A stretch of DNA of 64,000 nucleotides from Mytilus trossulus (GCF_036588685.1 NC_086380.1:70618001-70682000), one strand, 5' to 3'; shown: positions 424-60,894, counted from the stretch's first letter. Numbers and translations: made by a program. Notes: generated by a model not told the origin, from the sequence alone.

Positions 424-1468
424 ATGACAAAAATATTCTCAGTTCTTCTTTTTTTTAGTTTTTCTTGTTTATCTGAGTTTGGAACCACATTTGCTGTATA
501 TATAGAACAGACCACTACATACAGAAATGACTATAGCGTTTATTCAAAGAAGACCACGACAAACATGGATGCTGGTAGGGTATCTCCAAAACAGACCATG
601 ACATACAAAGATGATGGTGGTGTATCTTCAAAGCAGATCACGACAAACATAGATGATGGTGGTGTATCGTCAAAGCAGACCACGACATACTTAGATGATG
701 GTGGTGTATCTTCAAAGCAGACCACGACATACATAGATGATGGTGGTGTATCTTCAGAGCCGACCACGACATACATAGATGATGGTGATGTATCTTCAGA
801 ACAGACCACGACATACATGGATGATGGTGGTATAGCTACAGAGCAGACCACGACATACATAGATGATAGTGGTGTATCTTCAGATCAGACCACGACATAC
901 ATAGATGATGGTGGTGTTTCTTCAGAGCAGACCCCGACATACATAGATGATGGTGATGATGGTGGCATATTTTCAGAGCGGACCACGACATACATGGATG
1001 ATGGTGGTGTATCTTCAGAACAGACCACGACATACATAGATGATGGTGGTGTTTCTTCAGAGCAGACCCCGACATACATAGATGATGGTGGTGTATCTTC
1101 AGATCAGAGTACGACATACATAGATGATGGTGGTGTAGTTTCAGAGCAGACCCCGAAATATGACTATAGTGTATCTTCAGAGCAGACCACGACATACATA
1201 ATTGATGGTGGTGTATCTTCAAAGCAGACATCGACATACATAGATGATTGCGGTGTATCCTCAGGGCAGACCACGACATACATAGATGACTATGGTGTAG
1301 TTTCAGAGCAGACCAGGACATACATAGATGATAATGGTGTATCTTCAGAACAGACCACGACATACATAGATGATGGTGGTATATCTACAGAGCAGACTGC
1401 AGAATTCATGGATGACTATGGTGTATCATTGAAGACAGCTGTAGAAATAAATTATGTGGAAAAAATAA
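424..1468 (+). CDS. Coding exon 1 of repeat-ectodomain GPCR paralogue A: signal peptide plus about 22 copies of a 14-aa repeat (EQTTTYIDDGGVSS)
   Basis: ATG at 424, hydrophobic leader MTKIFSVLLFFSFSCLSEFGTTFA, open 42-bp tandem repeat, phase-1 donor A|GTAAGT at 1468/1469; upstream acceptor-like TTTTCAATCAG near 336. Confidence 0.8.
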
Positions 1469-2612
1469 GTAAGTATTAAAACAATTTAATGAAACAAATA
1501 TTGTTTCATAGTTTCCTTTTGTCTATTTTACACTGTTGTTTGATACATTTTGTGCATTTACTTCAAATATATTTCTGTCAATTTTAAACTAGTTCAATGT
1601 ATTGGTTTTACTTCCCAGCTAGTTAATTACTATTTTTTCATTAATCAAGAGAAAAATTGCAATAAAAAAACTTGGGGCGACTATAAAATCTGCATTAGCT
1701 TTTCATTGAACTGCTCATTTTTTTTATTGATCAACATCAATTTAATTTAAAAAAAAAACCATATAATGCATCATATTAACGCAGATTGTTCTAGGGTCAA
1801 TTAAAAAAAAATAGTTTCGGTTACAGAATCTTTCTTTTTTTTATTCTGCAACTGTGCTACTTTTGCAGTCAAATTGCTTAGACCATATATATGTATATGT
1901 GTCATATGTGATACACAGAGTTTTTAATCGTATATGGCTTAATTTATAACATCAATGAATAATACAGGAGTCGGCTTCGCAAATTTTTTTGACGTTGCCC
2001 ACTTCAAATTCAAAATATTTCATTTGGAACCGTTGTTAGAGTATTGTCTCGAATATGAAATGTATTTGTAGTCAGATCAGTACAGGCTGGTGCAGCCTCG
2101 CATTCTGTACCAAGTCAGGAACATGTCAGTTGTTTTACTCTATCTCTGGTCTTATATCGTTTACATTTGTCATGAATATCAATCTATTGGCTGATATCGT
2201 TTACATTTGTCTGTTTTCATGGAATTCTCCTGTAGAAATTCACCTTGGAGTTTGGTATTTTTGTTTCACTTTCTTTTCATTCTTCTTTTTTCTACGCCTT
2301 ATACATGTTATACACATAAACTTTCTATTTCAAGAAAATGTTAATCTATTCAATATATACTTGTTTGTGTAGTCAAACTGCATTTACCGTATACATATTG
2401 TATACAGACATTTCATCAATTCGGTATTGGTCTGTTCATAATTATAAATTAATTGCTAACTAAACTTTGATTGTTTCTGAATGCTTATGATTTTTTACAC
2501 AACGAATAGACTTCTGTACCTTAGCTGTTATTGACAAAATCTTTTGAAATCCTGAGCCTTCATTGCTCTTCAACTTTATGTACTTTATTTTGTGTTTCAT
2601 TACTTTTTATGC

Positions 2613-2658
2613 GAGCGTCACTGATGAGTCTTTTGTTGACGAAACGTGCGACTGGCGT
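2613..2658 (+). ncRNA. Degenerate type I hammerhead ribozyme (retrozyme fragment)
   Basis: GAGCGTCA CTGATGAG TC-loop-GAC GAAAC GTGC GAC TGGCG; cleavage triplet reads GAC instead of GTC. Confidence 0.6.
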
Positions 2659-3258
2659 TCAAAGTCTTAAGCCTGATATCTACTATGAGTTTATATGCAT
2701 ACGGTATTACGCATTATATTTGATGTTGAAGCGTTTCCTTGAGTGTTATCATTGAAATTAATACGAATACTGGTTTTCGGAAAAGTTTGACGTCGTCCGC
2801 CACAAATTTAAATAATGGTTGTTACCTATTAGAAAACTATTCGTTTGGAACAGTTTAAAAGTTGCAGTATAAGTAGAACGACCATACATTATCTAAAAAA
2901 ATACAAACTATATTCAATTCAACTCCTAACAGGAATAAATGGTTAGCAATGCTTTGCATGCTAACTGTTTGACTGACTTTCTAAGCATTGTACAAATATG
3001 TATTTTATAGATTATGGAAGTTAACGTTTTGAAAAAACAAAATAAAGCTTCTACTCTTCATGTTACTCTATTATTTTAACACCCTGAAGTATCCAAGTAC
3101 ACCATGATACGTAGCCGAACGGTATACAGGGTACTGAAGGGTGTTGAAATACCCATATCTATGGATTTGAACGTAGATAACGAATTATCCCCGGTCTAAG
3201 TCTGAATCGGGCCAGTTTTATGGAAATTCAGGTACAAAGTGTAACGTGAAAACGACGT

Positions 3259-4573
3259 TTTAAGCTCACCTGGACCAAAGGGCCAAGTGAGCTTTTCTCA
3301 TCACTTGGTGTCCGTCGTCGTTAATTTTTACAAACATCTTCTCCTCCGCCAAACCAACCAAGATGCCCGCCATGGCTAAAATTAGAAGGGGATATCAAGT
3401 TTTGAAATTGTCCGGTGTTCCGCCAAACCAACCAAGATGGCCGCCATGGCTAAAAATATAACATAGGGGTAAAATATATATTTTGGCTTATAACCCTAAA
3501 ACCAAAGCATTAAGAGCAAATCTTACATGAGGCAAAATTGTTAATCAAGTCAAGATCTAACTGCTCTAAAATTTTCAGATAAATTGGACAACCAGTTTTG
3601 GGTTGCTGCCCTCCTGAATTAGTAATTTTAAGGACATTTTGTCATTTTCGGTTTACTATCTTGAATACTTTTGTAGATAGAGATAAACTGTAAACAGCAA
3701 AATTGTTCAGGAAAGTAAGATCTACAAACCATCATCAAAATAGTCAGTTGACCCCTAAAAAGGAGTTATTGCCCTTTATAGTCATTTTTTACCAATTATT
3801 CGTAAATTTTTGTTATCTTTTACAATTGATTGATTGTTGGTTGCTTAACGTCCAGTGGCAAATATTTCATGCATATTCAGGACGATTATCTTTCACAAAA
3901 GTCTTCTCCTCTGAAAAAAACTGGGCTAAATTTAACCAAACTTAGCCAAAGTCATGTTTAGGGTATGTAGTTTAAAAATGTGTGCGGTGACCCAGCCAAT
4001 CGACTAAGATGGCCGCCATGGCTGAAAATAGAACATAATGGTTAAGTGTAGATTTTGGCTTATAACTCTGAAAACCAAAGCATTTACAGCAAATCTTACA
4101 AAAGGGTTAAATTGGTTATCTAGTCAATATCTTTCTGCACTGAAATTTTCAGATGAATCGGACAACTGGTTGTTGGGTTGCTGCCCCTCAATTGGTAATT
4201 TTTAAGGAAATTTTGCCCTTTTGGTTATTATCTTGAATACTATTTTAGAAGATGTAAACTGTAAACGGCAATAATGTTCAACAAATTAGTTCTACAAATA
4301 AGTCAACTTCACGAAAATGATCAGTTGACTCTTTAAGGAGTTATTGCTTTTTATAGTCAATTTTTAACAAGTGTTAACAAAATATTTTCCTCTGTAACTA
4401 AAGGGCAAAGTTCATTACAAAAAATTGTAAGCAGCAAGAATGTTTTGTAAAGTTAGATTTACAAACACATCACCATCACCAAAACACATTTTTTTCATGA
4501 ATCCATCTGTGTCCTTTGTTTAATATGCACATATACCAAGTTGAGAGACACAGGCTCTTTAGAGGTTCTAGTT
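3259..4573 (+). mobile_element. Helentron/HINE-like non-autonomous element with internal degenerate tandem repeats
   Basis: 5' T-run then AGCTCACCTGG...GTGAGC hairpin, short GTCC/GTC microsatellite, repeated AAGATGGCCGCCATGGCT units, 3' hairpin-like AGGCTCTTTAGAGGTTCTAG followed by a T-run. Confidence 0.55.
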
Positions 4574-5307
4574 TAATTATCCTAAAAAGTTTTAATGAAA
4601 TTTGAAAATTTCACATAATTTTTACGGGGTGTAGGGTACTTGGTAGAACCCTACAGGTAGTCAAATGTAAGACGTTTTTTAACACGGAGACAGAGAAAAT
4701 CGATTGAGTTAAATTTGGCGCTCAATGTTGTGAGAGTTACGTCATAGATGGTGTGAAGTCAACGTGAGTCATTTGCATAGCTAGGTCAGTAGTCCCATTC
4801 CTTGAAAATATGGCAGTCATTTGATGCATTTAATGAAGTTAGTGTAAATAATCAGCATAATAGAACAAAATCGTTAATTTATTAAATATTTAATTACAAA
4901 CATCATGGATAATCTTAAATTTTCAATATTTCACAAGGAGAAATCATGGAACTAAGGAAAACTTGCGTGAAGTTCCCCGGGATAATGGTTAGCAAAGTCC
5001 GGGAATACGGGTTATCAACACCTAGGAGCTATGGGTTTTGTAACGACGTGAATTAACCAATCAAATTCCTAGATATATTCTAAGCCGGGGATTTATATTC
5101 ATAAACAAAGTCTTGTTTATATCACTTTGATGATTGGATATTTATATCACAAATGAAAGATGTTGAGACAAATCTTGTACCTTTTTGTGTAACTTAGTGA
5201 TTGTTATAATTGACAAGAATTTGCGATTTAAATAAATTCATTTTTTCAATAAAATATCTATTAATTAAATAAACTAATCAAAGATACAAGGACAACATTT
5301 TGTATAT

Positions 5308-5353
5308 ACGTCAGACGCTCGTTTCGTCTACAAAAGACTCATCAGTTACGCTC
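5308..5353 (-). ncRNA. Type I hammerhead ribozyme, core intact, stem I imperfect (retrozyme fragment)
   Basis: Minus strand GAGCGTAA CTGATGAG TCTTTTGTAGAC GAAAC GAGC GTC TGACGT. Confidence 0.6.
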
Positions 5354-7500
5354 GTATCCAAAAAAGTTTAAAGGTCAAAATGTTACAATGATGAGGGAAG
5401 TTTTTAACGACATTGACGGGGTATACAGCCCTTGCACTGTCGGTCTTAGTACAAAATGATTCTTCTATAAGTCTATTCTTTTTCAAAGGTACAGCTTAGT
5501 AGGTATAACTCCTCTATAAGAATGGCAAAGTCTTCCACAAAATATCCAGTAATTGAAGAAACGTTTACAAAATCATCACAATAAAATTATATTGTAGTGA
5601 TTTTGTATTCGTTTCTTCATCATTGTACTGGGTCTGAATAAGACCAAAAACAGCTGAAATAGCGCCGCACTCTGTGACTGTGGGTTTTATTTACCTAAAT
5701 TATGTTTTTGCTTCATTATACATGTATAAAGTTTATTTGGAATAGTAAACATGGTAAAGTATCTGAATATATGTTTTGATCTCATTTAATATTCCGCGCT
5801 TACACAGTGATATTGTTCATTTTGTGTCATGTAATATATTCTTGACAAGGGAGATAATTTCAGCATCTCTGTTACATTCCTCCTTTCTTATATTTCGAAT
5901 TACAGTGAAGTTTTATTTGAGTTGAGCTTTCGAAATAATCTCACATTGTCTTTCATCACATTGCTTTTACACATTCATCAAAGTCAACCCTAAGCAGAAA
6001 ACAACTGATAAAGTGCAAAGTTGTACTGCTACTATATGCTTAAAAATGATTCCATGTTTTGAGAATGTTTCGATGCGGGTTTAACATCTCTGGCTTTCCA
6101 ATGTTTAGGTTCGAGTGATTCTTTAAAAAAACGCCTCTGACGCACGAAATTTATATCTGTGTTATTTTCATTTATTATTACCACTAAATGTTATAATAAA
6201 GATTTTACATCAAATCGTTAAAAAATTTGTTTGCTTTTAAACTAAAGCAAAAAGAATAATACATTTGTTTCCGCTAACCCTACCTACCATACTTTTTAGT
6301 TTCTACTCTAAAACGTTTTATGCCATTTTGGAACAAGCATTGTTAAAGTCAGACTTATACTCTAGTAGTAACAAGCAAAATAATGTTTGTAAAATAATAT
6401 GATATTGCCTATACTATTTTTGTTCAACACGTTAGGGAAAACACATGTATTTTATTTTTTGCCTTAACAAATATATATGTGAAACGGTTCAGGAGTTATT
6501 TACAAATATGGCAGTCAGACTGCTACACAACAGATAATTTCAAAAATTCTTTAACAATTATGAAGTGCGGACTGCCCTGTTACACTCGGTGTATGTGGGA
6601 TTTCTGTTGCTTACTATTTCGTTTATATGTTTTCTTTTGTTCATGCTGTTGTTTATATGTTTTCTTTTGTTCATGCTGCTGTCTGTCTGATTTCTAGTTA
6701 TAGTTATTGATCCTTGATGTCTTTAACTATAATGATCTTCAATGATAACAAATAATTGAAAAAAAAAAATTCAATGAACGAAAGCGTGTGCACATAAGAA
6801 TCAGATTAAGTACTAAATGACATGCCGCATAGGTTTAGGAAAGTGTAAAACAAATGTCCATATAATTTGAGAAAAAAAGAAAACTAGAATGAAAAATTAG
6901 CGAATATCAATGTGAGATATCTTGATTTTGTACAAAACTCCATACAATTATAATCCGGTTCAAGACCCATTTGGGATTTTAAAAGACTTTCTAGAAACTA
7001 AAATTGATATACAAAAGGAAATAAACATCTATGTGATGCATAGTTTTAAAACCAAAACATGTCAACAAAACAAGAGATAAACTCGCTAGATTTGAGCGAT
7101 GTAGTGATAGGAATGATGAGTTGAGTGCTTTGAAAATAAAAGTGGTGGAATATACGAAACTGACATTCAAAAATTACCATTGCAAAAATAAGCTTCAAAT
7201 GTGTTACTGTAATTGATAAAAAGCTCCCCTAAACAAAAACAAAAACAAAAACAAAAACAAAAACATTATTTGTTCAACACGTACAGTTCCCAAATTCCTA
7301 ATTGAAGTATTCAAACGAGGTATACTTTTCCATCCCTGAGAAAGAGTTCGTTTCTAGTATACAGAGTTCCCCATGCCTGAGATAGAGGTCGTTCCTAGTA
7401 TAAAAATGAAGTAGAGTTTTCCATGCCTGAGATAGAGGTCGTTGCTAGTATACAAATGAAGAAGCGCTTCCCATGCCTGAGAAAGAGGTCATTACTAGTT

Positions 7501-8022
7501 AATAGTTATCAAAAGTACCAGGATTATAATTTTATACGCCAGACGCGCGTTTCGTCTACATAAGACTCATCAGTGACGCTCAGATCAAAATATTTAAAAA
7601 GCCAAACAAATACAAAGTTGAAGAGCATTATGGACCCAAAATTCCAAAAAGTTGTGCCAAATACGGCTAAGGGAATCTACTCCTAAGGTAAGAAAATCCT
7701 TAGTTTTTCGAAAAATTCAAAGTTTTGTAAACAGAAAATTTATAAAAATGACCATATAATTGATATTCATGTCAACACCGAAGTGCTGACTACTGGGCTG
7801 GTGATACCCTCGGGGACGAAACGTCCACCAGCAGTGGCATCGACCCAGTGGTGTAAATAGTTATCAAAAGTACCAGGATAATAATTTTATACGCCAGACG
7901 CGCGTTTCGTCTACATAAGACTCATCAGTGACGCTCAGATCAAAATAGTTAAAAACCCAAACAAATACAAAGTTGAAGAGCATTAAGGACCCAAAATTCC
8001 AAAAAGTTGTGACAAATACGGC
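7501..8022 (-). mobile_element. Non-LTR retrozyme: about 1.5 tandem copies of a 355-bp unit, each with a minimal type I hammerhead (7536-7580 and 7891-7935)
   Basis: Direct repeat starting at 7501 and 7856; minus strand AGCGTCA CTGATGAG TCTTATGTAGAC GAAAC GCGC GTC TGGCGT gives stems I and II, palindromic stem III and a GUC site. Confidence 0.85.
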
Positions 8023-8392
8023 TTATTGGTAACAGATATCCTAGAAGACAGATTTTATATTGATTATAGATATTTTTATCTCAGTCTACGTCGGGGCTTT
8101 TATAAGCAGACTTTACAATATGGCTTTTGCTCATTTTTGAAGGTCGTACGGTGATCTAGTTTTGTTCACATTTATATCATTTGGACACCGGTTGATAGAT
8201 GTCCAATCGGCAATTTAACCATATATCCGAATAATGAAAATTTTATCAAACACACCACTTTTTTCAAATTAGTACCACACAGTCGCTTTATAAGTACTTT
8301 TTTATTTGGTGTTTTTTTACCGTACAATCAAGTGTTCTGATATTTGTTATAAATATTTGCATAGTATTATGGAACACTTTTATATATTTCAG

Positions 8393-10086
8393 AATATAAG
8401 AACCAGATGAAATGCGAAATTATTGATTTGACGGATATCGTTTTGCCATCTGCTTGGGGACAGGTGTACCCTGTCAACAAATCAGGTCAGTCGCTTCTGA
8501 TATGGTTTGATGACTTCAACTATCTTTCATTTACCATCAGAAAGAATTGTGTTAACCTCGCATTAGATATGTTTCTCGATAAAATAATAGATGTAGCGTA
8601 TTTACAAGACTTTTTAACAAAATGCCCGGATGGAACATTCATTCAAAACATATTTTGTGACTCTTCTGTGGCCTATAATGTCAGCTACATCAAAGAAGTT
8701 TTTCCACACTTTTGCAATGTACAGATATATTTTACCGATAAGTTGAACCATTGCACAGCGCAATTTAATGCATTTTTGGAATCAAAAAAATATTTATTAA
8801 CAAATGCGGACATCTACAATTTCCTTACAAATAAAACAATCTGCTGGGATTACGTTTATTTCACTTATATGTTTAATGTTGCGTTTTCGTTGAAAGAAAT
8901 AAGTGATGATAGAAATAACGTTAAAACAGGTAGTTTATCAATGCATCACATCACATCAAGTGCATATTTCTATATCACACTGAAATACGAATCATGTAAA
9001 ACACAATTTCTTCATTACATCTATTGGAATGGTTTACATGTGAAAGAAAACGACACGTACCTCCTGAGTATTGATGATGTCATCACGTTTAATGAGGAAA
9101 ATAATTGTATTCACGTCCGTTTTCCGTGCCCAGATGAATATAGGCAGATCATTTTAGGATTACCAAAGTCAGCAGTAGTTTATTTAGAAACCGCAATAGC
9201 AGTAGAAGTGACACTTGTAAACAGTTTCATGTTATATATATTTCTGCAAAAGAAGAATCGAACACCCGTCACTTTACTCCTTTCAGCACTGGCTATATCT
9301 GATACTACAACTGCAATCTTGATGACAATTCCAACATGTATTGCCTATCAGATATATGGTTACCAGATTGATTACAGTGATATAATGCCATATTGGTATA
9401 TATTTGACTATCCACAATGTATAATGTATTTATTACTTAATGACTTGAAGTATACCTTCCACTTTGTATCAGTTTTAATAACAACACTTTTAGGTCTACA
9501 GAAAACTGCTGCTCTTCTATTTCCAATGTGGAGCAAACGCCATTTGAGTAATACTGTGAGTGTAGTATGTTCAGTTTGTATAGTTATCTTTTGTTTAGGT
9601 ATTTTTTCCCCTCTTCTGTATAGTTCATTGTTATTTGAAGAGATTCAAGGCAGTTGTTGTCAAAAAAAATCTGATGAAAAATACGGTTACATGTATGATA
9701 TAGTTCACGGTTGTACCATTCTAGTATGTTCAATTTTAATTGTCTGTACAGTTTATATAGTATGCAAGTTAACAATTTGTAGAAGAAATCTTCCATGGAC
9801 TGATAGTTTGGCTGTTCAGAAAAGAAACCGAATGTCAGCATTAACAGTAGTTTTCATTTGTATTATATTTGTTTTATCAGAGTCCATGTCTATTGTTCAC
9901 TTGTTATTTTATTTTCAATTATTCAGTTCATTCCCATTGCTTGTCAATATCATACAATACACAGACCTCAGTCTTATCATTGGATTCTCTTTCAACTTTA
10001 TAATTTATATTGTAATGAGTAGAGAGTTTCGAACTAAATTGTTGATTACCGGTACAAATATAGTAAGACGTTGCAAATGTTGGTAA
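8393..10086 (+). CDS. Coding exon 2 of GPCR paralogue A: about 250-aa Cys-containing ectodomain plus rhodopsin-like 7TM domain (FMRFamide-receptor/Srw-like); spliced protein predicted at 912 aa
   Basis: Acceptor TATTTCAG at 8392 in phase with exon 1; TM2 LAISD, TM3 end LQKTAALLFP, TM7 NFIIY, helix 8 MSREFR, C-terminal Cys cluster. Confidence 0.85.
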
Positions 10087-10789
10087 CGTGGATATTCTGC
10101 CATATCAGACCATCCGTCAATTTTTGCTTGTAATTCTTGTCCTGTAATGATGTTCCTCGTGGGGTTTTGATGACGTGATTACTTGACCGTGTATTTATTG
10201 TTATTGTTTGATTACCAAAGTTAAATATTTCATGATTATTTGATTATTTTAGACTGTAATTTTGATTATTTGATTATTTTAGACTGTAATTCTGATTATT
10301 TGATTATTTTAGACTGTAATTTTGATTATTTGATTATCTTGTTAAAAATAATTACTGATTATATTGGGGGGAAATGTGATTATGTGATTACTTTGACACC
10401 CCATGAGGAATAGATTAATAAACATAGAGCCAGATTATATTTACCGAAAAAGATTTATATGGGCAGATGAGGTCATTCTGACATAAACATTTCAAAAATT
10501 TTAAAATTTTGCAATACCAACACTTATGTATACTGTCATGTTAGGAATTTTTGATAGATATATTGTTGAATGGAAACGCATTAGTAAATCTTTCAGGCAG
10601 GCAAATGGGCGAATCAAGTTGAGAAAATATACCAAAACTGTTGAAGCCTTTTAGTGAAAGAATTGCATTTGCAAAATTTAGACGTTAAATTGTGTAACAA
10701 AACCTGTAATTTTGTTTTGACAAGATGCCGTGAAGCTTTTAATTTTAAATACGTATAACAATTATGCTGTATATTTTAACCATTTATTT

Positions 10790-17440: not shown

Positions 17441-17441
17441 A

Positions 17442-18316: not shown

Positions 18317-18324
18317 AATTCAAA

Positions 18325-20111: not shown

Positions 20112-20173
20112 AAAAGTGTTTAAAATGATGAGACACATGGTAACAATCATCATTCGAGCAAGAGGTGATCATC

Positions 20174-21716: not shown

Positions 21717-21747
21717 CGTTGAAAGTGCTATTGATATCACAATTGTC

Positions 21748-48103: not shown

Positions 48104-48874
48104 ATGGCAAAAATGATCTCAGCCCTTCTCTTTGTCAGTTTTTCTTGTTTATCTGAGTTTGGACCTACATTTGCTGAACGTATAAAACAGAACACTACAT
48201 ACACGAATGGCTATGGTGTATCTTTAAAGCAGACCACGACACATATAGATGATGGTGGTGTATCTTCAAAGCAGACCACGATTTACAAAAATGATGGTGG
48301 TGTATCATCAGAACAGACCACGATTTACAAAAATGATGGTGGTGTATCTTCAGAGTCGACCACGACACACATAGATGATGGTGGTGTATCTTTAAAACAG
48401 ACCACGACATGCATAGATGATGGTGGTGTATCTTCAGAACAGACCACGACATACATAGATGATGGTGGTGTATCTTTAAAACAGACCACGACAAACATAG
48501 ATGATGGTGGTGTATCTTTAAAACAGACCACGACATGCATAGATGATGGTGGTGTATCTTTAAAACAGACCACGACATGCATAGATGATGGTGGTGTATC
48601 TTCAGAACAGACCACGACATACATAGATGATGGTGGTGTATCTTTAAAACAGACCACGACATGCATAGATGATGGTGGTGTATCTTCAGAGTCGACCACG
48701 ACACACATAGATGATGGTGGTGTATCTTCAGAACAGACCACGACATACATAGATGATGGTGTTGTATCTTCAGATCAGACGACGACATACATAGATGATG
48801 GTAGTGTATCGTCAGAGCAAAAAAAAGAAAAAGAAAAAGTTGTAAAAAATATAAAATGGTATATGATACGTTAG
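48104..48874 (+). pseudogene. Truncated duplicate of GPCR paralogue B exon 1 (signal peptide plus about 15 repeats, no splice donor)
   Basis: Matches the 51368 ORF until the duplication junction, then reads into unrelated sequence. Confidence 0.6.
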
Positions 48875-51367: not shown

Positions 51368-53906
51368 ATGGCAAAAATGATCTCAGCCCTTCTCTTTGTC
51401 AGTTTTTCTTGTTTATCTGAGTTTGGACCTACATTTGCTGAACGTATAAAACAGAACACTACATACACGAATGGCTATGGTGTATCTTTAAAGCAGACCA
51501 CGACACATATAGATGATGGTGGTGTATCTTCAAAGCAGACCACGATTTACAAAAATGATGGTGGTGTATCATCAGAACAGACCACGATTTACAAAAATGA
51601 TGGTGGTGTATCTTCAGAGTCGACCACGACACACATAGATGATGGTGGTGTATCTTTAAAACAGACCACGACATGCATAGATGATGGTGGTGTATCTTCA
51701 GAACAGACCACGACATACATAGATGATGGTGGTGTATCTTTAAAACAGACCACGACAAACATAGATGATGGTGGTGTATCTTTAAAACAGACCACGACAT
51801 GCATAGATGATGGTGGTGTATCTTCAGAACAGACCACGACATACATAGATGATGGTGGTGTATCTTTAAAACAGACCACGACATGCATAGATGATGGTGG
51901 TGTATCTTCAGAGTCGACCACGACACACATAGATGATGGTGGTGTATCTTCAGAACAGACCACGACATACATAGATGATGGTGTTGTATCTTCAGATCAG
52001 ACGACGACATACATAGATGATGGTAGTGTATCGTCAGAGCAAACCACGACATACATAGATGATGGTGGTGTATCTTCAGGGCACACCACGACATACATAG
52101 ATGATGGTGTTGTATCTTCAGAACAGACCACGACATACATAGATGATGATGGTGTATCTTCAGAGCCGACCACGACATACATAGATGATGGTGTTGTATC
52201 TTCAGAACAGACCACGACATACATAGATGATGATGGTGTATCTTCAGAGCCGACCACGACATACATAGATGATGGTGGTGTATCTTCAGGGCAGACCACG
52301 ACATACATAGATGATGGTGTTGTATCTTCAGAACAGACCACGACATACATAGATGATGATGGTGTATCTTCAGAGCAGACCACGACATACATAGATGATG
52401 GTGGTGTATCTTCAGAACAGACCACGACATACATAGATGATGGTGGTGTATCTTCAGAACAGACCACGACATACATAGATGATGGTGGTGTATCTTTAAA
52501 ACAGACCACGACATGCATAGATGATGGTGGTGTATCTTCAGAACAGACCACGACATACATAGATGATGGTGGTGTATCTTTAAAACAGACCACGACATGC
52601 ATAGATGATGGTGGTGTATCTTCAGAGTCGACCACGACACACATAGATGATGGTGGTGTATCTTCAGAACAGACCACGACATACATAGATGATGGTGTTG
52701 TATCTTCAGATCAGACGACGACATACATAGATGATGGTAGTGTATCGTCAGAGCAAACCACGACATACATAGATGATGGTGGTGTATCTTCAGGGCACAC
52801 CACGACATACATAGATGATGGTGTTGTATCTTCAGAACAGACCACGACATACATAGATGATGATGGTGTATCTTCAGAGCCGACCACGACATACATAGAT
52901 GATGGTGTTGTATCTTCAGAACAGACCACGACATACATAGATGATGATGGTGTATCTTCAGAGCCGACCACGACATACATAGATGATGGTGGTGTATCTT
53001 CAGGGCAGACCACGACATACATAGATGATGGTGGTGTATCTTCAGGGCAGACCACGACATACATAGATGATGGTGGTGTATCTTCAGGGCAGACCACGAC
53101 ATACATAGATGATGGTGGTGTATCTTCAGAACAGACCACGACATACATAGATGATGGTGGTGTATCTTCAGAACAGACCACGACATACATAGATGATGGT
53201 GGTGTATCTTCAGAACAGACCACGACATACATAGATGATGTTGGTGTATCTTCAGAACAGACCACGACATACATAGATGATGGTGGTGTATCTTCAGAAC
53301 AGACCACGACATACATAGATGATGGTGGTGTATCTTCAGAACAGACCACGACATACAAAGATGATGGTGGTGTATCTTCAGAGCCGACCACTACATACAT
53401 AGATGATGGTGGTGTATCTTTAGAGCAGACCACGACATACATAGATGATGGTGGTGTATCTTTAGAGCAGACCACGACATACATAGATGATGGTGGTGTA
53501 TCTTCAGAACAGACCACGACAAACATAGATAATGGTGGTGTATCTTCAAACCAGACGACGACATACATAGATGATGGTGGTGTAACTTTAGAGCAGACCA
53601 CGACAAACATAGATAATGGTGGTGTATCTTCAAACCAGACGACGACATACATAGATGATGGTGGTGTATCATCAAAGCCGACCACGACATACCTAGTTGA
53701 TGTTGGTGTATCTTCAAAACAGACCACGGCATACATAGATGATGGTGGTATAGCTACAGAGCAGACCACGACATACAAAGATGATGATGGTGTACCGTCA
53801 AAGCGGACCACGACATACATAGATGATGGTAATATAGCTACAGATCAGACAAGAAAATTCATGGATGACTATGGTGTATCATTGAAAACAACTGTAGAAA
53901 AAATAA
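51368..53906 (+). CDS. Coding exon 1 of GPCR paralogue B: signal peptide plus about 58 14-aa repeats
   Basis: GTCATGG start, open 42-bp array, phase-1 donor A|GTAAGT at 53906/53907. Confidence 0.8.
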
Positions 53907-54669
53907 GTAAGTATAAAATATTTTTTTTCTGAAAACCAACTTATTAAACAAAAGTGGTATCATAGTTTCCTTTTGGTCTATTTTACATTGTTGTTTGATA
54001 AATTTTGTTTTGTACTTCAATTATAGTTCTGTATTACTAAATGTCAATCAAATCTAGTACAATATATTGATTTTACCACCCTGCTAATTAGTTTCTGTTT
54101 ATCATTCATCAAGAGACAAATACATTAGATTATAATTAGAGCGAATATAATTCTAGATTATCGTTTCATTTAACTGCTCATCTGATCAACACCTATTAAA
54201 TAAAAACACGTATAATCCATCAGATAAACGCAGATTGTTATAGAACTCAATTTCAAAGAAAATATATATTAAGGTTAAAAGAATTTTTTTTTTAAATTCT
54301 GAAACTGTGCTATTTTACAGTCAAATTGCATTGACCATATAATATGTACATGTGATAAACAGAGTTTAATCGTGTCTTGTTTAATTTTTACACTTTAAGG
54401 AATAACACATGAGTCGGTTTCACTAACTATTTACGACTAATTAGTTAAAGTCTTTTGTGAAACCGACTACAGCTTCGAGGAATGTTTACGTTGCCCGCTT
54501 AAAATTCAAAATATTTCATCTGGAACAGTTGTTAGAGTTTCATCTCAAAGAGAATAACTATGCATTGTCTCGAAATATAAAATGTGTAGTCAGCTCAGTG
54601 CAGGATAGAAAGGCCTGATGCAGCCTCTCATTCTGTACCAAACCAGGAATATGACAGTTGTTTTACACT

Positions 54670-55370
54670 CTTGGCTGATATCGTTTACATTTGTCAGTTT
54701 TTTACTCTATCTGTTGGCTGATATCGTTTACATTTGTAGTCAGATCAGTACAGACTGGCGCAGCCTCTTATTCTGTACCAAGTCAGGAATATGACAGTTG
54801 TTTTTCACTCGATCTGTTGGCTGATATAGTTTACATTTGTCAGTTGTTTTTCACTCGATCTGTTGGCTGATATAGTTTACATTTGTCAGTTGTTTTTCAC
54901 TCGATCTGTTGGCTGATATCGTTTACATTTGTCAGTTTTTCACTCGATCTGTTGGCTGATATCGTTTACATTTGTCAGTTTTTCACTCGATCTGTTGGCT
55001 GATATCGTTTACTTTGTCAGTTGTTTTTCACTCGATCTGTTGGCTGATATCGTTTACATTTGCCAGTTGTTTTTTACTCGATCTGTTGGCTGATATCGTT
55101 TTCATTTGTCAGTTTTTCACTCCATCTGTTGGCTGATATCGTTTACATTTGTCAGTTTACAACCTATATGTTGGCTGATATCGTTTACATTTGTCAGTTT
55201 ACACACTATCTGTTAGCTGATATCAGTTACATTTGTCAGTTTACACTCTATCTGTTGGCTGATATCGTTTACATTTGTCAGTTTAAACTCTATTTGTTGG
55301 CTGATATCGTTTACATTTGTCAGTTTACACTCTATCTGTTGGTTGATATCGTTTACATTTGTCAGTTTTT
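54670..55370. repeat. About 42-45-bp intronic minisatellite (CTGTTGGCTGATATCGTTTACATTTGTCAGT...)
   Basis: Many units here; only about 2 units at the paralogous site 2130-2215. Confidence 0.9.
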
Positions 55371-55719
55371 ATGGAATTCCCCTTTTGAAGTTTACCTTGG
55401 AGTTTGGTATTTTCGTTACACTTTTACTTGTTTCTAGGCCTTAAACAAATAAACTTTATATTTCAAGAAAAATATTTAGCTTTTCGATATATATTTTTTG
55501 TGCAGTCAAACTGCATTACCGTATGAATATTATATACATACATAGAGATATTCAAGGAAACCCAAGTGGTCAAATTAACATCAGAATACATGTATATCTG
55601 TCATACTTGGTATTATAAAATTCTCTTTATTTTAAGAACCAAAATATGTGTTTGCCATAATTCTAAAGAACAAAAATAAATATAAAATACTTGTCTGTCC
55701 CCCCCCCCCTTGTTATAGA

Positions 55720-58400
55720 CTTTACAATGATTCTTACAACTGTAGCAGGCTATGCGCTTTTTCTGTTTCCCTCTTCTTATAGTTTTTACAATGATTCTTA
55801 CAACTGTAGCAGGCTATGCGCTTTTTCTGTTTCTCTCTTGTTATATTTTTTACGATGATTCTTACAACTGTAGCAGGCTATGCGCTTTTTCTGTTTCCCT
55901 CTTCTTATAGTTTTTACGATGATTCTTACAACTGTAGCAGGCTTTGCGCTTTTTCTGTTTCTCTCTTGTTATAGTTTTTACGATGATTCTTACAACTGTA
56001 GCAGGCTATGCGCTTTTTCTGTTTCCCTCTTCTTATAGTTTTTACGATGATTCTTACAACTGTAGCAGGCTATGCGCTTTTTCTGTTTCTCTCTTGTTAT
56101 AGTTTTTACGATGATTCTTACGACTGTAGCAGGCTATGCGCTTTTTCTGTTTCCCTCTTCTTATAGTTTTTACGACGGTTCTTAAAAACTGGAGCAAGCT
56201 ATGCGCTTTTTCTGTTTCCCTCTTCTTATAGTTTTTACGACACTTCTTAGAACTTTATCAGCAAGCTATGCACTTCTTCTGTTTCCCTCTTATTAAAGTT
56301 TTTACGACGATTCTTAGAATTGGAGCAAGCTATGCGCTTCTTCTGTTTCCCTCTTGTCATAGTTTTTACGACAATTAATAGAACTAGAGCAAGCTATGCG
56401 CTTCTTAATATAGTTTTAAAGACGATTCCTATAATTGGAGCAATCTATGCGTTCTTCTGTTTCCCTCTTGTTATAGTTTTTACGACAATTCATAGAACTA
56501 GAGCAAGCTATGCGCTTCTTCTGCTTGCCTCTTAATATAGTTTTACGACGATTCTTAATACGGGAGCTAGAGATGCGCTTCTTCTGTTTCCCTCTTTCTC
56601 CTCTTGGAGTTTGGTATTTTCGTTACACTTTTACTTGTCTCTAGGCCTTAAACAAATAAACTTTATATTTCAAGAAAATATTTAGCTTTTCGATATATAT
56701 TTTTTGTGCAGTCAAACTGCATTACCGTATGAATATTATATACATACATAGAGATATTCAAGGAAACCCAAGTGGTCAAATTAACATCAGAATACATGTA
56801 TATCTGTCATACTTGGTATTATAAAATTCTCTTTATTTTAAGAACCTAAATATGTGTTTGCCATAATTCTAAAGAACAAAAATAAATATAAAATACTTGT
56901 CTGTCCCCCCCCCCCTTGTTATAGACTTTACAATGATTCTTACAACTGAAGCAGGCTATGCGCTTTTTCTGTTTCCCTCTTCTTATAGTTTTTACAATGA
57001 TTCTTACAACTGTAGCAGGCTATGCGCTTTTTCTGTTTCTCTCTTGTTATATTTTTTACGATGATTCTTACAACTGTAGCAGGGTATGCGCTTTTTCTGT
57101 TTCCCTCTTCTTACAGTTTTTACGATGATTCTTACAACTGTAGCAGGCTTTGCGCTTTTTCTGTTTCTCTCTTGTTATAGTTTTTACGATGATTCTTACA
57201 ACTGTAGCAGGCTATGCGCTTTTTCTGTTTCCCTCTTCTTATAGTTTTTACGATGATTCTTACAACTGTAGCAGGCTATGCGCTTTTTCTGTTTCCCTCT
57301 TCTTATAGTTTTTACGACGGTTCTTAAAAACTGGAGCAAGCTATGCGCTTTTTCTGTTTCCCTCTTCTTATAGTTTTTACGACACTTCTTAGAACTTTAT
57401 CAGCAAGCTATGCACTTCTTCTGTTTCCCTCTTATTAAAGTTTTTACGACGATTCTTAGAATTGGAGCAAGCTATGCGCTTCTTCTGTTTCCCTCTTGTC
57501 ATAGTTTTTACGACAATTAATAGAACTAGAGCAAGCTATGCGCTTCTTAATATAGTTTTAAAGACGATTCCTATAATTGGAGCAATCTATGCGTTCTTCT
57601 GTTTCCCTCTTGTTATAGTTTTTACGACAATTCATAGAACTAGAGCAAGCTATGCGCTTCTTCTGCTTGCCTCTTAATATAGTTTTACGACGATTCTTAA
57701 TACGGGAGCTAGAGATGCGCTTCTTCTGTTTCCCTCTTTCTCCTCTTAATATAGTTTTACGACGATTCTTAGTACGGGAGCTAGAGATGCGCTTCTTCTG
57801 TTTCCCTCTTTCTAAGAACTGAAGCAAGCTTTGTGATTCTTCTGTTTCCCTCTTGTTATAATTTTTACGACGATTCTAACAACTGGAGCAAGCTATGTGC
57901 TTCTTCTGTTTCCCTTTTCTTATAGTTTTGACAACGATTGTTAGAACAAGAGCAAGCTATGAGCTTTTTATGTTTCTCTCCTGTTATAGGTTTTACGACG
58001 ATTATTTTAACTGGAGCAAGGTATGCACTTCTTTTGTTTGCCTCTTAATATAGTTTGTACGACGATTCTTAAAACTGGAGCAAGCTATGAGCCTCTTCTG
58101 TTTCCCTCTTGTAAAAGTTTTTACGACGATTTTTACAACTTGGGCAAGCTATGTGTTTCTTCTGTTTCCCTATTGTTATAGTTTTTTGGACGATTCTAAG
58201 AACGGAAGCAAGTTGTGCGTTTCTTCTGGTTCCCTCTTTTTTAGAACATGAGCAAGCTGTGCGTTTCTTCTATTTCCCTCTAGTTATAGATTTTAAGACG
58301 ATTCTTAGAACTAGAACAAGCTTGGTGCTTCTTCTGTTTCCCTGTTGTTATAGTTTGTACGACGATTCTTAGAAATTTGAGCAACCTATGCACTTTTTCT
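55720..58400. repeat. 65-bp intronic minisatellite, interrupted by a ~1.2-kb duplication (about 55398-56604 and 56605-57746)
   Basis: Unit GCTATGCGCTTTTTCTGTTTCCCTCTT...; identical ORFs at 56320 and 57462. Confidence 0.9.
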
Positions 58401-59185
58401 TTTATGCCTGATATAACGATAATTACTAGCATTCAAATGAAGTAAAGTTTCCTATGCATGAGATTGTGGTCGTTACTAGTATTCACATGATGTAGAGTTC
58501 CCCATGCCTGATATAGATCATTGCTAGTATTCAAATGAAGTAGAGTTCACAATGCCTGAGATAGAGGTCGTAACTAGTATACAGATACCGTATAAGACAA
58601 AGAAAATATTGATTAAAGATATTTTTGATCTCAAACTACGCAGAGGTTTTTAATAAATGACTTTACGATATGGCTTTTGCTCAGTGTTAAAGGCAGTATA
58701 GTTGAGATATGTCTTATCGGCAATTAAACCATATATCTGAGTTATATTTTACAGTAATGCTTCATCTCGCTATTTACATCTACCCTTAGGCTCGTGAAAA
58801 TGGTTGAATATGATAGTTTTACGAGAAGACAGAGTATTTAATCTCACAACAATAAAACATATAGAAACAACTATAAATGTGATTTAATTAATGTTCGTCA
58901 TTGAAAGTTAGCCGACTGAAAAGTTTAAATGGAAGAAATTTTTTCCTGATACATAAACCTAGGAAATTTCAATTTGTATAGAAAGTAAACTGGATAAAAT
59001 TAGATCTGATGTCTGGATGCCAAATGAGGGTATCTCCCCAAACCAATTCCATGTGTAAAATCTTATCATAAAACGCACAGGCGCTTATAAAGGACTCTTT
59101 TATTTGTTGTTTTACCGTACAATCAAGTATTATTATATTTGTAATAGATATGCATGGTATTATGGAACACTTTTTTCTATTTCAG

Positions 59186-60894
59186 AATATATGAATCGAA
59201 TAAAATGCGAAATAATGAATTTGACGGATATCGTTTTGCCATCTGCTTCGGGACGGGTGTACCCTGTGAATAAATCAAGTCAGTCGCTTCTGATATGGTT
59301 TGATGACTTCAGCTATCTTTCACTTTCCATTAGCAAGAATTGTGTTAGCCTCGCATTAGATATGTTTCTCGACATAATTATAGATGTAGCATATTTACAA
59401 GACTTTCTAACAAAATGCCCGGATAAAACATTCAGTCAAGACATATTGTGTGACTCTACTCTGGCCTATAATGTCAGCTACATTAAAGACGTGTTCCCAC
59501 ACTTTTCCAATGTACAGATATATTTTATCGATAAGTTGGACCACTGCACAGCGCAATTTAATGCATTTTTGGAATCAGAAAACCATTTATTAACAAATGC
59601 AGAAATCTACCATTTCCTTACGAATAAGACAATCTGCTGGAAACATGTTTATTTCACTTATATATTAAATGTTAAGTTTTCGTTGAAAGACTTAAGTGAT
59701 GATAGAAATACCATTAAAACAGGTAGTTTATCAAAGCATAGATCGAAGGCTGACGTATATATCATACTTCAACACCAAGCATGTCAAGAACAATTTCTTC
59801 ATTACATCTATTGGAATGGTTTACATGTGAAAGAAAACGACACGTACCTCCTGAGTATTGATAATATCATCACGTTTAATGAGGGAAACAATTGTATTCA
59901 CGTTCGTGGTCCATGCCCAGATAGATATATCCAGGCCGCACTGGCATTTCCAAAGTCAGCAGTAGTTTATTTGGAAACCGCAATAGCAGTAGAAGTGACA
60001 CTTGTGAACGGTGTCATGTTATATATTTTTCTGCAAAAGAAGAACCGAACACCGGTCACTTTACTCCTTTCAGCTCTGGCTATATCTGATACTACAGTCG
60101 CAATCCTCATGACCATTCCAACATGTATTGCCTTTCAGATATATGGTCACCAGATGGATTACAGAGATATAATGCCTGTGTGGTATATATTTGACTATCC
60201 ACAATGTATAATGTATTTATTTATTGATGAATTGAAGTTTACCTTCCACTTTGTATCAGTTTTAATAACAACACTTTTATGTCTACAAAAAACTGCCGCT
60301 CTTCTATTTCCAATGTGGAGCAAACGCCATTTGAGTAATACTGTGAGTGTAGTATGTTCAGTTTGTATAGTTATCTTTTGTTTTGGTATTTTTACCCCTA
60401 TTCTGTATAGTTCATTTTTAATGGAAGAGGTTCAAGGCAGTTGTTGTCGTAAATCGTCAGTTATATATCCTAAAGTATACACTTACTTGTATACAATAGT
60501 TTACGGGTGTACCATTCTAGCATGTTTAATTGTAATCGTCTTTACAGTTTATATAGTATGCAAGTTAACAATTTGTAGAAGAAATCTTCCATGGACTGAT
60601 AGTTTGGCTGTTCAGAAAAGAAACAGAATTTCAGCATTAACAGTAGTTTTAATTTGTATTATATTTGTTGTATCAGAGTCCGTGTCTATTGTTGCATTTT
60701 CCCATTTTACACTGATGCTTTTTGACATTAACAGTGCATTGCCATTCTATTTAGATATCAAACAATACGTAGATCTCAGTTTAATACTTGGATTCTCTTT
60801 AAACTTTATAATTTATATTGTTATGAGTAGAGAGTTTCGAAATAAATTGTGGATTACCGTTACAAATATTGTAAGATGTTGCAAATGTTGGTAA
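59186..60894 (+). CDS. Coding exon 2 of GPCR paralogue B (ectodomain plus 7TM); spliced protein predicted at 1415 aa
   Basis: Acceptor TATTTCAG at 59185 in phase with exon 1; collinear with 8393-10086. Confidence 0.85.

What the first reader, a model, noticed from the sequence alone, without database searches (positions are those of the whole stretch)
424..10086. Rhodopsin-class GPCR with a signal peptide and a long acidic tandem-repeat stalk, hidden by a 6.9-kb intron
Seen: the repeat ORF ends at a phase-1 GTAAGT donor and the 7TM ORF starts at a phase-1 acceptor. The same phase match holds independently in the paralogue (53906/59186). The joined protein is signal peptide + (EQTTTYIDDGGVSS)n + ~250-aa Cys-rich domain + 7TM. 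Known: long Thr/Ser stalks are typical of adhesion GPCRs, not FMRFamide/Srw-like class A receptors. Inference: an adhesion-like or surface-sensing class A receptor whose stalk could be O-glycosylated, Tyr-sulfated, Ca2+/mineral-binding, or folded as a beta-solenoid with Thr ladders.
Basis: partly seen in the sequence, partly recalled or inferred. Interest (0 to 1): 0.85.

Follow-up and report, generated by a model that had tools for sequence, protein, structure and literature searches.

The report
Mussel GPCR with long N-terminal repeat tail
This is a real two-exon mussel gene for a very divergent rhodopsin-type receptor that carries an unclassified 250-residue outer domain and, at its far N-terminus, a fast-changing tail of 21 to 56 copies of a 14-residue Thr/Tyr/Asp-rich unit; public mussel gene models already join the two exons, but I found no paper describing the family.

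Summary
Exon 1 (424-1468) encodes a signal peptide and about 21 copies of a 42-bp (14-aa) unit, and ends at a phase-1 GTAAGT donor. Exon 2 (8393-10086) starts at a phase-1 acceptor and encodes a 254-aa, 8-Cys ectodomain plus seven TM helices. The paralogue (51368-53906 / 59186-60894) has the same structure with 56 units.

The join is supported in several ways:
- Donor, acceptor and phase are conserved in four close paralogues, and all 9 family members I examined have a signal-peptide exon with a phase-1 donor.
- Neither intron holds a rival signal-peptide exon.
- Most paralogues' exon 2 has no start codon.
- Three Mytilus galloprovincialis gene models carry the identical junction.
- RNA-like contigs cover exon 2 but not unique intron, and two of them begin exactly at 8393.
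No read was shown crossing from donor to acceptor.

The 7TM is class A by profile, but with QKT for DRY, Glu for W6.48 and NFxxY for NPxxY. The ectodomain folds confidently (pLDDT 83) yet matches no Pfam family or PDB fold, and the named hits are all Mytilus. The genome holds at least 45 full-length paralogues.

The repeat lies distal to the ectodomain, so it is a tail, not a stalk. Its units evolve neutrally (pN/pS about 1). It appears to have grown from a single 14-aa segment that is still single-copy in short-tailed paralogues. Its function is inferred only.

The parts
424..495 (+). Copy 1, exon 1: start codon and 24-residue signal peptide (MTKIFSVLLFFSFSCLSEFGTTFA)
   Evidence: Hydrophobic segment at residues 1-25. 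The same N-terminus is conserved in copy 2, the C4 paralogues and the M. galloprovincialis models.
504..1397 (+). Copy 1, exon 1: 42-bp tandem array, about 21 units of consensus EQTTTYIDDGGVSS. The mature tail has pI 4.05, is 30% Ser+Thr and holds 26 Tyr.
   Evidence: TRF. Unit listing. Composition. Unit pN/pS 1.05.
1398..1468 (+). Copy 1, exon 1: non-repeat tail (...YGVSLKTAVEINYVEKI) ending at the phase-1 donor. GTAAGT lies at 1469-1474.
   Evidence: Donor AAAA(A/C)AA|GTAAGTAT is conserved in 4 paralogues. The VEKI tail is conserved in distant paralogues and in P0006.
1469..8392 (+). Intron of 6,924 bp with repeat- or TE-derived segments. It contains no other signal-peptide exon with a phase-1 donor.
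   Evidence: Scan. Unique parts 5729-5925 and 6517-6910 have zero depth in all four runs, and the neighbouring bins (5532-5728, 5926-6122, 6911-7304) 0-2.3, while exon 2 is covered.
8393..9156 (+). Copy 1, exon 2, first part: phase-1 acceptor, then a 254-residue ectodomain with 8 family-conserved Cys and 4 N-glycosylation sequons.
   Evidence: AF2 pLDDT 82.7. No Pfam hit, no PDB sequence hit and no fold match. Two RNA-like contigs begin exactly at 8393.
9157..10086 (+). Copy 1, exon 2, second part: seven TM helices, helix 8, C-terminal KCW and the stop codon. Divergent class A.
   Evidence: Hydropathy. Alignment A2. Pfam 7tm_1 at 25.5 bits for this copy, and 15 of 18 paralogues hit. PDB profile hits are class A only. 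dN/dS 0.4-0.8.
51368..53906 (+). Copy 2, exon 1: signal peptide plus 56 units, with a phase-1 GTAAGT donor at 53907.
53907..59185 (+). Copy 2 intron (5,279 bp), mostly 42-bp and 64-bp minisatellites.
59186..60894 (+). Copy 2, exon 2: ectodomain plus 7TM. 78% amino-acid and 87% nucleotide identity to copy 1.
48104..48874 (+). Truncated extra copy of exon 1 (signal peptide plus about 14 units, then unrelated residues and a stop). It has no donor.
   Evidence: It was created by the 99%-identical tandem duplication 45562-48825 / 48826-52089, whose breakpoint lies inside the array.

Best explanation
Positions 424-10086 hold one two-exon gene. A tandem paralogue lies at 51368-60894. Both belong to a mussel-lineage expansion of at least 45 full-length genes in this genome.

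Predicted product, from the N-terminus:
- a cleavable signal peptide;
- a distal tail of 14-residue Thr/Ser/Tyr/Asp/Gly-rich units (21 in copy 1, 56 in copy 2);
- a compact, disulfide-bonded 254-residue ectodomain of unclassified fold, directly before TM1;
- a very divergent class A 7TM core. It keeps N1.50, D2.50, the C3.25-ECL2 cysteines and W4.50. It has QKT in place of DRY, an invariant Glu at 6.48 and NFxxY in place of NPxxY.

Shown or strongly supported: the gene structure, family membership, purifying selection on exon 2, and neutral-like evolution and copy-number change of the repeat.

Inferred mechanism: the conserved ectodomain is the ligand-recognition module of an orphan environmental, chemosensory or immune-type receptor. 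The tail acts through bulk properties rather than a precise sequence: length, dense Thr/Ser that could carry O-glycans, and negative charge in this subfamily. It would be an extended, glycocalyx-like antenna or shield in front of the ectodomain.

Origin: the tail grew by replication slippage or unequal exchange from a single 14-aa segment (EQDRYKMQVYGVSS-like). That segment is still single-copy in short-tailed paralogues.
For: Structure and splicing:
- Coordinates and phases are as stated.
- Donor and acceptor sequences and phase 1 are conserved in copy 1, copy 2 and two chromosome-4 paralogues whose exon 1 is only about 49% identical.
- The homologous phase-1 acceptor is seen in at least 16 paralogues.
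- 9 of 9 paralogues examined have an upstream signal-peptide exon with a phase-1 donor, 1.4-6.9 kb away.
- The same scan finds no competing exon inside either intron.
- Many paralogues have no Met near the start of exon 2.
- M. galloprovincialis models P0002, P0005 and P0008 read ...VEKI-K-YTNRMKCEIIDL across the same junction. P0004 and P0006 show tail + ectodomain + 7TM in other paralogues.
- In four small, RNA-like runs, exon 2 is covered while the unique intron bins read 0 to about 2. Contigs X2-12 and X4-23 start exactly at 8393 with unaligned overhangs.

Class A membership.

Ectodomain:
- 8 conserved Cys and AF2 pLDDT 82.7, pTM 0.77.
- No Pfam hit, no PDB sequence hit, Foldseek best E 0.15, VIA best Z 4.1.
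- Only 25 hits among 1.84 billion representative proteins. Every hit that carries a name is Mytilus.

Selection: exon 2 dN/dS is 0.39-0.77. Repeat units have pN/pS 1.05, and their synonymous fraction (0.25) equals the neutral expectation of 0.26.

Copy number and unit variation: 6, 14, 15, 17, 21, 22, 56 and about 70 units across loci and species. The unit is DRTPTYRNDYGVSS on chromosome 4, a 13-aa EKEADNSTLSYMF-type unit on C11, and a YP-type 14-mer in P0004.

Ancestral single unit.
Against: - No read or contig was shown to cross from 1468 to 8393. Read laying is limited to 6,000 bases on this genome and the intron is 6.9 kb. The overhanging letters at 8393 were not printed.
- The two contigs that start at 8393 are only 86-88% identical to copy 1. 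They therefore come from a paralogue, an allele or a sister species. One is also clipped at its other end, so aligner clipping at a conservation boundary is not fully excluded.
- The runs are RNA only by inference.
- The public gene models come from a pipeline that mixes transcripts, protein alignments and ab initio calls (PMC7653742), so they are not proof of transcription.
- Nothing tests glycosylation, ligand binding or G-protein coupling. The non-canonical QKT, E6.48 and NFxxY motifs could mean atypical signalling or none.
- Retention of a 13-14-residue period across distant paralogues, and the AF2 beta-strand pattern, hint at a structural constraint that a purely bulk-property tail would not need.
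Confidence: 0.8

Rival explanations
1. The repeat ORF is a separate gene for a secreted repeat protein. It would read through the donor to the stop four codons later (…SKY*). The 7TM exon would be translated from its own Met (8407) or from another 5' exon.
For: - The frame closes at 1477-1479 if unspliced.
- An in-frame ATG lies at 8407, and the M. coruscus model P0001 starts there.
- Exon-1-only copies exist: 48104-48874, and an inverted copy at C8:70691531-70694634 with no exon 2 within 9.5 kb.
Against: - The donor and its phase are conserved in every paralogue.
- No other signal-peptide exon lies in the introns.
- Most paralogues lack a start codon in exon 2.
- A 254-residue disulfide-rich N-terminal domain needs a signal peptide (established knowledge of GPCR biogenesis).
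- Exon 1 and exon 2 are always paired on the same strand.
- The acceptor at 8393 is used.
- Three public models join the two exons.
Confidence: 0.07
2. The gene is as described, but the repeat array is a selectively neutral minisatellite that expanded in a tolerated N-terminal linker. It contributes nothing specific to receptor function.
For: - Unit pN/pS is 1.05 and the synonymous fraction equals the neutral expectation.
- Copy number ranges from 1 to about 70 among paralogues and species.
- Charge is not conserved between subfamilies.
- The locus is full of other minisatellites.
Against: - The frame stays open over 846 codons in copy 2. This is only weak evidence (P about 0.09).
- Length differences between units are whole codons.
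- Independent amplifications of 13-14-aa Thr/Tyr-containing units occur in at least three subfamilies.
- The tail is retained in both Mytilus species sampled.
Confidence: 0.25
3. The repeat folds into a regular beta structure with one strand per unit (beta-solenoid or beta-roll) and DDGG turns. It would present Thr/Tyr ladders or bound Ca2+, forming a specific binding surface for mineral, ice, a cationic ligand or another surface.
For: - The single-sequence AF2 model gives 24 regularly spaced strands, one per unit, at pLDDT 50-65 rather than the 30-40 typical of disorder.
- Its weak Foldseek neighbours are all beta-helices: LpxD, GlmU, CsgA and VacA p55.
- The unit is rich in beta-branched residues followed by a DDGG turn (what the sequence shows).
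- The 13-14-residue period is kept in distant paralogues.
Against: - Mean pLDDT is 54.9 and all Foldseek matches have E > 1 and TM-score < 0.25.
- AF2 often builds solenoids on any repeat when given no alignment.
- Units evolve neutrally.
- The DD turn is replaced by RN in the chromosome-4 paralogue.
- There is no sequence match to any solved structure.
Confidence: 0.15

Closest known systems
Lineage-specific expansions (LSEs) of class A GPCRs in molluscs (PMC11886862, Mol Biol Evol 2025)
   Same: - A large, tandemly clustered, fast-evolving class A-type family with dN/dS 0.4-0.8.
- Restricted to one lineage.
- The receptor body is a single coding exon.
- A chemosensory role is presumed but untested.
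   Different: - This family has a conserved 254-residue, 8-Cys ectodomain with no Pfam family or PDB fold match.
- It has an obligatory 5' signal-peptide exon.
- In some members it has a tandem-repeat tail.
- Its core switches are non-canonical: QKT, E6.48 and NFxxY.
- Term searches in that paper ('ectodomain', 'intron': none; 'N-terminal': once) turned up no such architecture.
Class A receptors with acidic, Tyr-sulfated and O-glycosylated N-termini (chemokine receptors, C5aR). From my own knowledge.
   Same: - A distal N-terminal segment rich in Asp/Glu, Tyr and Thr/Ser on a class A core.
- The family's PDB profile neighbours include peptide and chemoattractant receptors: B1R, SSTR1 and C3aR.
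   Different: - Those N-termini are 30-50 residues long, non-repetitive and lead directly into TM1.
- Here there are 300-800 residues of tandem units, followed by a large folded domain.
- Sulfation was not tested.
Adhesion GPCRs with mucin-like Ser/Thr-rich regions, for example ADGRG4/GPR112 (PMC10687090)
   Same: A very long Ser/Thr-rich, presumably extended extracellular region on a 7TM receptor.
   Different: - Adhesion GPCRs are class B2 and have a GAIN/GPS autoproteolysis domain.
- Their mucin region lies between distal adhesion domains and the membrane.
- Here the core is class A, there is no GAIN/GPS domain, and the repeat is the most distal part.
- Pro is almost absent (1.5%), unlike PTS mucin domains.
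Public Mytilus gene models named 'G-protein coupled receptors family 1 profile domain-containing protein': P0002, P0005, P0008 (M. galloprovincialis), P0004 (M. coruscus), P0006 (M. edulis)
   Same: - Same family.
- Same exon 1-exon 2 junction.
- Same signal peptide and the same EQTTTYIDDGGVSS unit.
   Different: - About 80% amino-acid identity to both window copies.
- 15-17 units instead of 21 or 56.
- Several models are truncated or chimeric at the 3' end.
- All are uncharacterised.

Membership tests
Class A (rhodopsin-like) GPCR, Pfam PF00001 | Seven transmembrane helices with the N-terminus outside | tested here: met
   Seven hydrophobic segments at exon-2 residues about 266-284, 294-312, 357-375, 390-408, 439-457, 483-501 and 523-541. 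The signal peptide upstream places the N-terminus outside.
Class A (rhodopsin-like) GPCR, Pfam PF00001 | Significant match to the 7tm_1 profile | tested here: inconclusive
   Copy 1 scores 20.4-25.5 bits (E 4e-4 to 1e-5), below the gathering score of 30.5. However, 15 of 18 paralogues match at E <= 0.01 (best 4e-11). The family profile hits only class A receptors in the PDB (best 3.9e-5).
Class A (rhodopsin-like) GPCR, Pfam PF00001 | Conserved N1.50, D2.50, C3.25-ECL2 disulfide cysteines and W4.50 | tested here: met
   In alignment A2, N22 and D49 are invariant, C88 is nearly invariant, C167/C168 are invariant and W125 is nearly invariant. Positions were assigned through the HMM alignment to the B1 receptor.
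Class A (rhodopsin-like) GPCR, Pfam PF00001 | D/ERY at 3.49-3.51, CWxP in TM6 and NPxxY in TM7 | tested here: not met
   QKT replaces DRY (Q115 and K116 invariant). An invariant Glu (E242) aligns with W6.48, and there is no Pro at 6.50. NFxxY replaces NPxxY (N280, F281 and Y284 invariant).
Adhesion GPCR (class B2) | GAIN domain with a GPS cleavage site, and a 7tm_2 core | tested here: not met
   No GPS, GAIN or 7tm_2 hit in Pfam for exon 2 or for any of the 18 paralogues. The ectodomain has no PDB fold match.
Nematode-type Srw / FMRFamide-receptor-like chemoreceptors (PF10324) | Match to the Srw profile | tested here: not met
   Only 2 of 18 paralogues match (best E 6.3e-7). Copy 1 and copy 2 do not.
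Mucin-type (PTS) tandem-repeat domain | Tandem repeats rich in Pro, Thr and Ser that carry dense O-glycans | tested here: inconclusive
   The repeats are tandem with 30-34% Ser+Thr, but only about 1% Pro (5 of 324 and 7 of 822 residues). O-glycosylation cannot be tested with these tools.

The most novel reading that the evidence does not exclude
Mussels have evolved their own class of surface sensor. It would be a class A-derived 7TM with rewired activation switches (QKT, E6.48, NFxxY), coupled to a new-fold disulfide ectodomain. At its tip would sit a copy-number-variable Thr/Tyr/Asp repeat that folds into a beta-solenoid or Ca2+-loaded roll, possibly with modified Tyr. That repeat would bind an insoluble or polyvalent target such as mineral, ice, biofilm or byssal/DOPA chemistry. 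Contact with a surface would then be converted directly into G-protein signalling, and repeat length would tune reach or avidity between individuals.
Probability: 0.08. Interest if true: 0.85.

Novelty: new variant of a known kind. Interest (0 to 1): 0.55.

Why it matters
- GPCR diversity. The finding defines a large receptor family, apparently restricted to mussels, that standard class A screens score below threshold. It combines three unusual features:
  - an ectodomain with no known fold;
  - replacement of all three canonical activation motifs, while the structural class A residues are kept;
  - an N-terminal coding minisatellite whose length differs several-fold between paralogues and species.
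- Testable questions. How do such receptors signal without DRY, CWxP and NPxxY? What does the new ectodomain bind? Is repeat length a functional polymorphism in an animal already known for extreme gene presence/absence variation?
- Annotation. The 5' signal-peptide exon lies 1.4-6.9 kb upstream of the receptor exon, and several public models miss it. P0001, P0003, P0012 and P0015 all start inside exon 2.

Tried and rejected
- Joined protein not searched. The exons were handled separately by reference. Only natural database proteins that already span the junction (P0002 and others) were used.
- Read laying could not span copy 1's intron (6.9 kb against the 6,000-base limit). Copy 2's intron is mostly minisatellite, so I did not submit it. 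The single call covered 4350-10230. The overhang letters at 8393 were not among the rows printed, so the donor partner was not read.
- A search for short Logan protein fragments spanning the junction, using the exon 2 N-terminus as a 150-aa query, found nothing. A search with P0002 region 150-330 returned only the four known models.
I could not fetch the Logan contigs of P0011 or P0029, or the M. galloprovincialis loci.
- P0029 (a Logan contig carrying an acidic tail plus ectodomain) has no close counterpart in this genome (32% identity), so it could not serve as a spliced-transcript proof.
I examined five 6-kb stretches instead.
- The ESM Atlas gave no usable hit for the ectodomain. PDB sequence searches of exon 1 and of the ectodomain profile were empty. 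Pfam hits to exon 1 (YcgJ, zf_VAL1_N) fall below their cut-offs and look like compositional noise.
- ORF maintenance of the array is not statistically convincing on its own (P about 0.09).
- Two literature searches found no description of this architecture.
- Earlier scan notes on this genome added nothing on this gene.

Full report
**1. What is in the sequence**

The window is bivalve DNA. Every named protein relative is from Mytilus.

Copy 1:
- An ORF starts at ATG 424 and encodes a 24-residue hydrophobic signal peptide.
- It continues through a 42-bp tandem array at 504-1397 (21.2 copies). The only stop-free + frame of the array reads (E/K)QTTTYIDDGGVSS.
- A non-repeat tail follows (...YGVSLKTAVEINYVEKI). 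A GTAAGT donor starts at 1469, leaving one base of a codon in the exon, which is phase 1.
- After 6,924 bp, a pyrimidine tract and CAG precede 8393. Two bases complete the codon and the frame runs for 563 codons to the stop at 10084-10086.

Copy 2 repeats this plan: 51368-53906 and 59186-60894, with 56 units.

**2. Is the junction real?**

Openness of the array is weak evidence. Two antisense frames are open as well. From the 49 distinct unit variants, the chance of no stop is only about 0.09. The case rests on other evidence.

(a) Paralogues.
- The genome (1.30 Gb) has at least 78 matches to exon 2, and about 45 of them are full-length single-exon copies.
- EQTTTY-type exons occur only next to the four closest copies: two in this window and two on contig C4. 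There are also two exon-1-only copies.
- In all four genes the donor (AAAA[A/C]AA|GTAAGTAT), the acceptor (TTT[C/T]AG|AATAT) and phase 1 are conserved. Exon 1 is only about 49% identical between C8 and C4.

(b) Wider family.
- The homologous phase-1 acceptor is visible in at least 16 paralogues, down to 35% identity.
- I fetched upstream DNA for five more distant paralogues. Each has a signal-peptide exon ending in a phase-1 donor, 1.4-5.3 kb upstream. That makes 9 of 9 examined.
- Running the same scan on both window introns finds no alternative exon.

(c) No start codon. Most paralogues have no Met near the start of exon 2, so that exon cannot stand alone.

(d) Public gene models.
- M. galloprovincialis models P0002, P0005 and P0008 read signal peptide + 15-17 units + ...SVEKI-K-YTNRMKCEIIDL. 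This is the same junction.
- These models come from a mix of transcript, protein and ab initio evidence (PMC7653742).

(e) Sequencing runs.
- Four small public runs (81-189 million letters, stored as contigs) were laid on 4350-10230.
- They cover exon 2 at low depth. In all four runs the unique intron bins 5729-5925 and 6517-6910 read zero and the neighbouring bins (5532-5728, 5926-6122, 6911-7304) 0-2.3.
- Run X1 contigs match exon 2 at 96-98% identity.
- Two contigs (X2 record 12 and X4 record 23) begin exactly at 8393, with 10 and 29 unaligned letters beyond. This supports use of the acceptor.
- Both contigs are only 86-88% identical, so they come from a paralogue or a sister taxon. The overhang letters were not shown, so the donor partner was not read.

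I put the two-exon gene at about 0.85-0.9.

**3. The 7TM part**

- Seven hydrophobic segments are present.
- Copy 1 scores below Pfam's 7tm_1 cut-off (20-25 bits against 30.5), but 15 of 18 paralogues match (best 4e-11). Only 2 match Srw.
- A profile of 18 paralogues hits only class A receptors in the PDB: bradykinin B1 at 3.9e-5, then P2Y1, SSTR1, C3aR and rhodopsin.
- Conserved class A features: N1.50, D2.50, C3.25 with the ECL2 Cys-Cys, W4.50, helix 8 and a C-terminal Cys.
- Replaced switches: DRY is QKT (Q and K invariant). W6.48 aligns with an invariant Glu, and there is no P6.50. NPxxY is NFxxY.
- An invariant RRNLPWTD motif sits after TM5.
- dN/dS between paralogues is 0.39-0.77. This indicates functional but fast-evolving genes, as in chemoreceptor-type expansions.

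**4. The ectodomain**

- It has 254 residues, with eight family-conserved Cys and several sequons.
- With the 18-sequence alignment, AlphaFold2 gives pLDDT 82.7 and pTM 0.77: a mixed alpha/beta domain.
- No Pfam family matches and no PDB sequence matches.
- Foldseek's best hit has E 0.15 and TM-score 0.14.
- The exhaustive VIA search gives a best Z of 4.1, below the usual noise level of 7-8. This does not prove a new fold, but no known one was found.
- A profile search of 1.84 billion representative proteins finds only 25 hits. All hits that carry names are Mytilus.

**5. The repeat**

Position. The repeat is N-terminal to the ectodomain, so it is the most distal part of the protein. It is a tail or antenna, not a membrane-proximal stalk.

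Composition. In copies 1 and 2 the mature tail has pI 4.05, is 30-34% Ser+Thr, has one Tyr per unit and almost no Pro.

Evolution of the units.
- Units differ by about 6-9% per site. pN/pS is 1.05, and the synonymous share of distinct variants (0.25) equals the neutral expectation of 0.26.
- Length changes are whole codons.

Copy number across loci and species:

| Locus or model | Units |
|---|---|
| C4a | about 6 |
| Truncated copy (48104) | 14 |
| M. galloprovincialis models | 15-17 |
| Copy 1 | 21 |
| C4b | about 22 |
| Copy 2 | 56 |
| Inverted orphan copy | about 70 |

Unit sequence in other subfamilies.
- C4b: DRTPTYRNDYGVSS, which is not acidic.
- A C11 paralogue: 13-aa EKEADNSTLSYMF-type units with sequons.
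- P0004: a YP-rich 14-mer.

Origin. Short-tailed paralogues read signal peptide + NTTYYNVHPEQDRYKMQVYGVSSEPSVDRYPVEKI. The segment EQDRYKMQVYGVSS matches the E-Q...G-V-S-S frame of the unit. The arrays therefore look like amplifications of one ancestral 14-aa segment. This is an inference.

Structure. A single-sequence AF2 model gives one beta strand per unit at pLDDT about 55, with only insignificant beta-helix neighbours. The solenoid idea stays open but unsupported.

**6. Mechanism**

Most likely this is an orphan receptor of an environmental, chemosensory or immune type. The conserved ectodomain would do the recognition. The tail would act through bulk properties: length, probable O-glycans, and charge in this subfamily. 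Only the architecture and the selection pattern are shown. The rest is inference.

Rivals:
- a separate secreted repeat protein (0.07);
- a functionless neutral minisatellite inside a tolerated linker (0.25);
- a folded Thr/Tyr-ladder or Ca2+-binding solenoid (0.15).

**7. Novelty**

- The gene models exist in public databases as uncharacterised 'GPCR family 1 profile' proteins.
- I found no paper describing the family, its ectodomain or its repeat tail.
- It is best filed as a new variant within mollusc lineage-specific class A expansions (PMC11886862).

**8. Limits**

- One read-laying run of at most 6,000 bases could not span either usable intron.
- The joined protein was deliberately not searched.
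- Tissue of expression is unknown.
- The Polinton-like element elsewhere in the window was only observed.

Noticed in passing
window 45562-52089: A 3,264-bp tandem duplication at 99% identity (45562-48825 and 48826-52089). Its breakpoint lies inside the coding repeat array. The result is a truncated exon 1 (48104-48874) with a signal peptide, about 14 units, a short unrelated end and no donor. It could be a recent event or an assembly artefact.
   Followed up: partly
G000:C8:70691531-70694634 (minus strand, 9.5-12.6 kb past the window end; L034 1516-4637): A third, inverted copy of exon 1 with about 70 units. It has an intact signal peptide and a phase-1 GTAAGT donor, but a frameshift near L034 2154-2175. 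It shares the upstream 28-bp minisatellite and the first intronic 42-bp minisatellite with copy 2. No exon 2 lies within 9.5 kb downstream.
   Followed up: partly
window 16286-25551: A run of same-strand ORFs that looks like a Polinton/Maverick-type element: a 384-aa integrase-like ORF, 140-, 156- and 440-aa ORFs, a 155-aa protease-like ORF, a 184-aa P-loop ATPase-like ORF and a 1,267-aa protein-primed polymerase-like ORF. This was read by eye only. Earlier notes of the scan also call this a Polinton. I observed it only and did not analyse it.
   Followed up: no
window 15851-15896: An interstitial (TAACCC)x7.7 telomere-type hexamer run just upstream of the Polinton-like ORFs.
   Followed up: no
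window 4350-4743, 5138-5531, 7502-8092 (copy 1 intron): Intron segments with very high summed contig depth in all four RNA-like runs (up to about 79,000). Many contigs have rearranged joints between 5.3 kb and 7.6-7.9 kb. This looks like an abundant, transcribed repeat or TE family rather than intron retention.
   Followed up: no
window 10779-11382 and 12198-12530; L031 7210-7823; L032 7666-8258: Minisatellites lie just downstream of the receptor exon: 13-bp x46 and 25-bp x13. ORF-like translations of the 25-bp array resemble arrays found downstream of both chromosome-4 paralogues. The gene duplications therefore seem to have carried their flanking minisatellites along.
   Followed up: no
window 42003-44621 (minus strand): Four consecutive minus-strand ORFs of 155, 209, 179 and 212 aa.
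   Followed up: no
alignment A2 (7TM of 18 paralogues): An invariant intracellular motif RRNLPWTD(S/N) directly after TM5, and a C-terminal KCW, are conserved across the whole family. Neither corresponds to a class A motif that I know.
   Followed up: no
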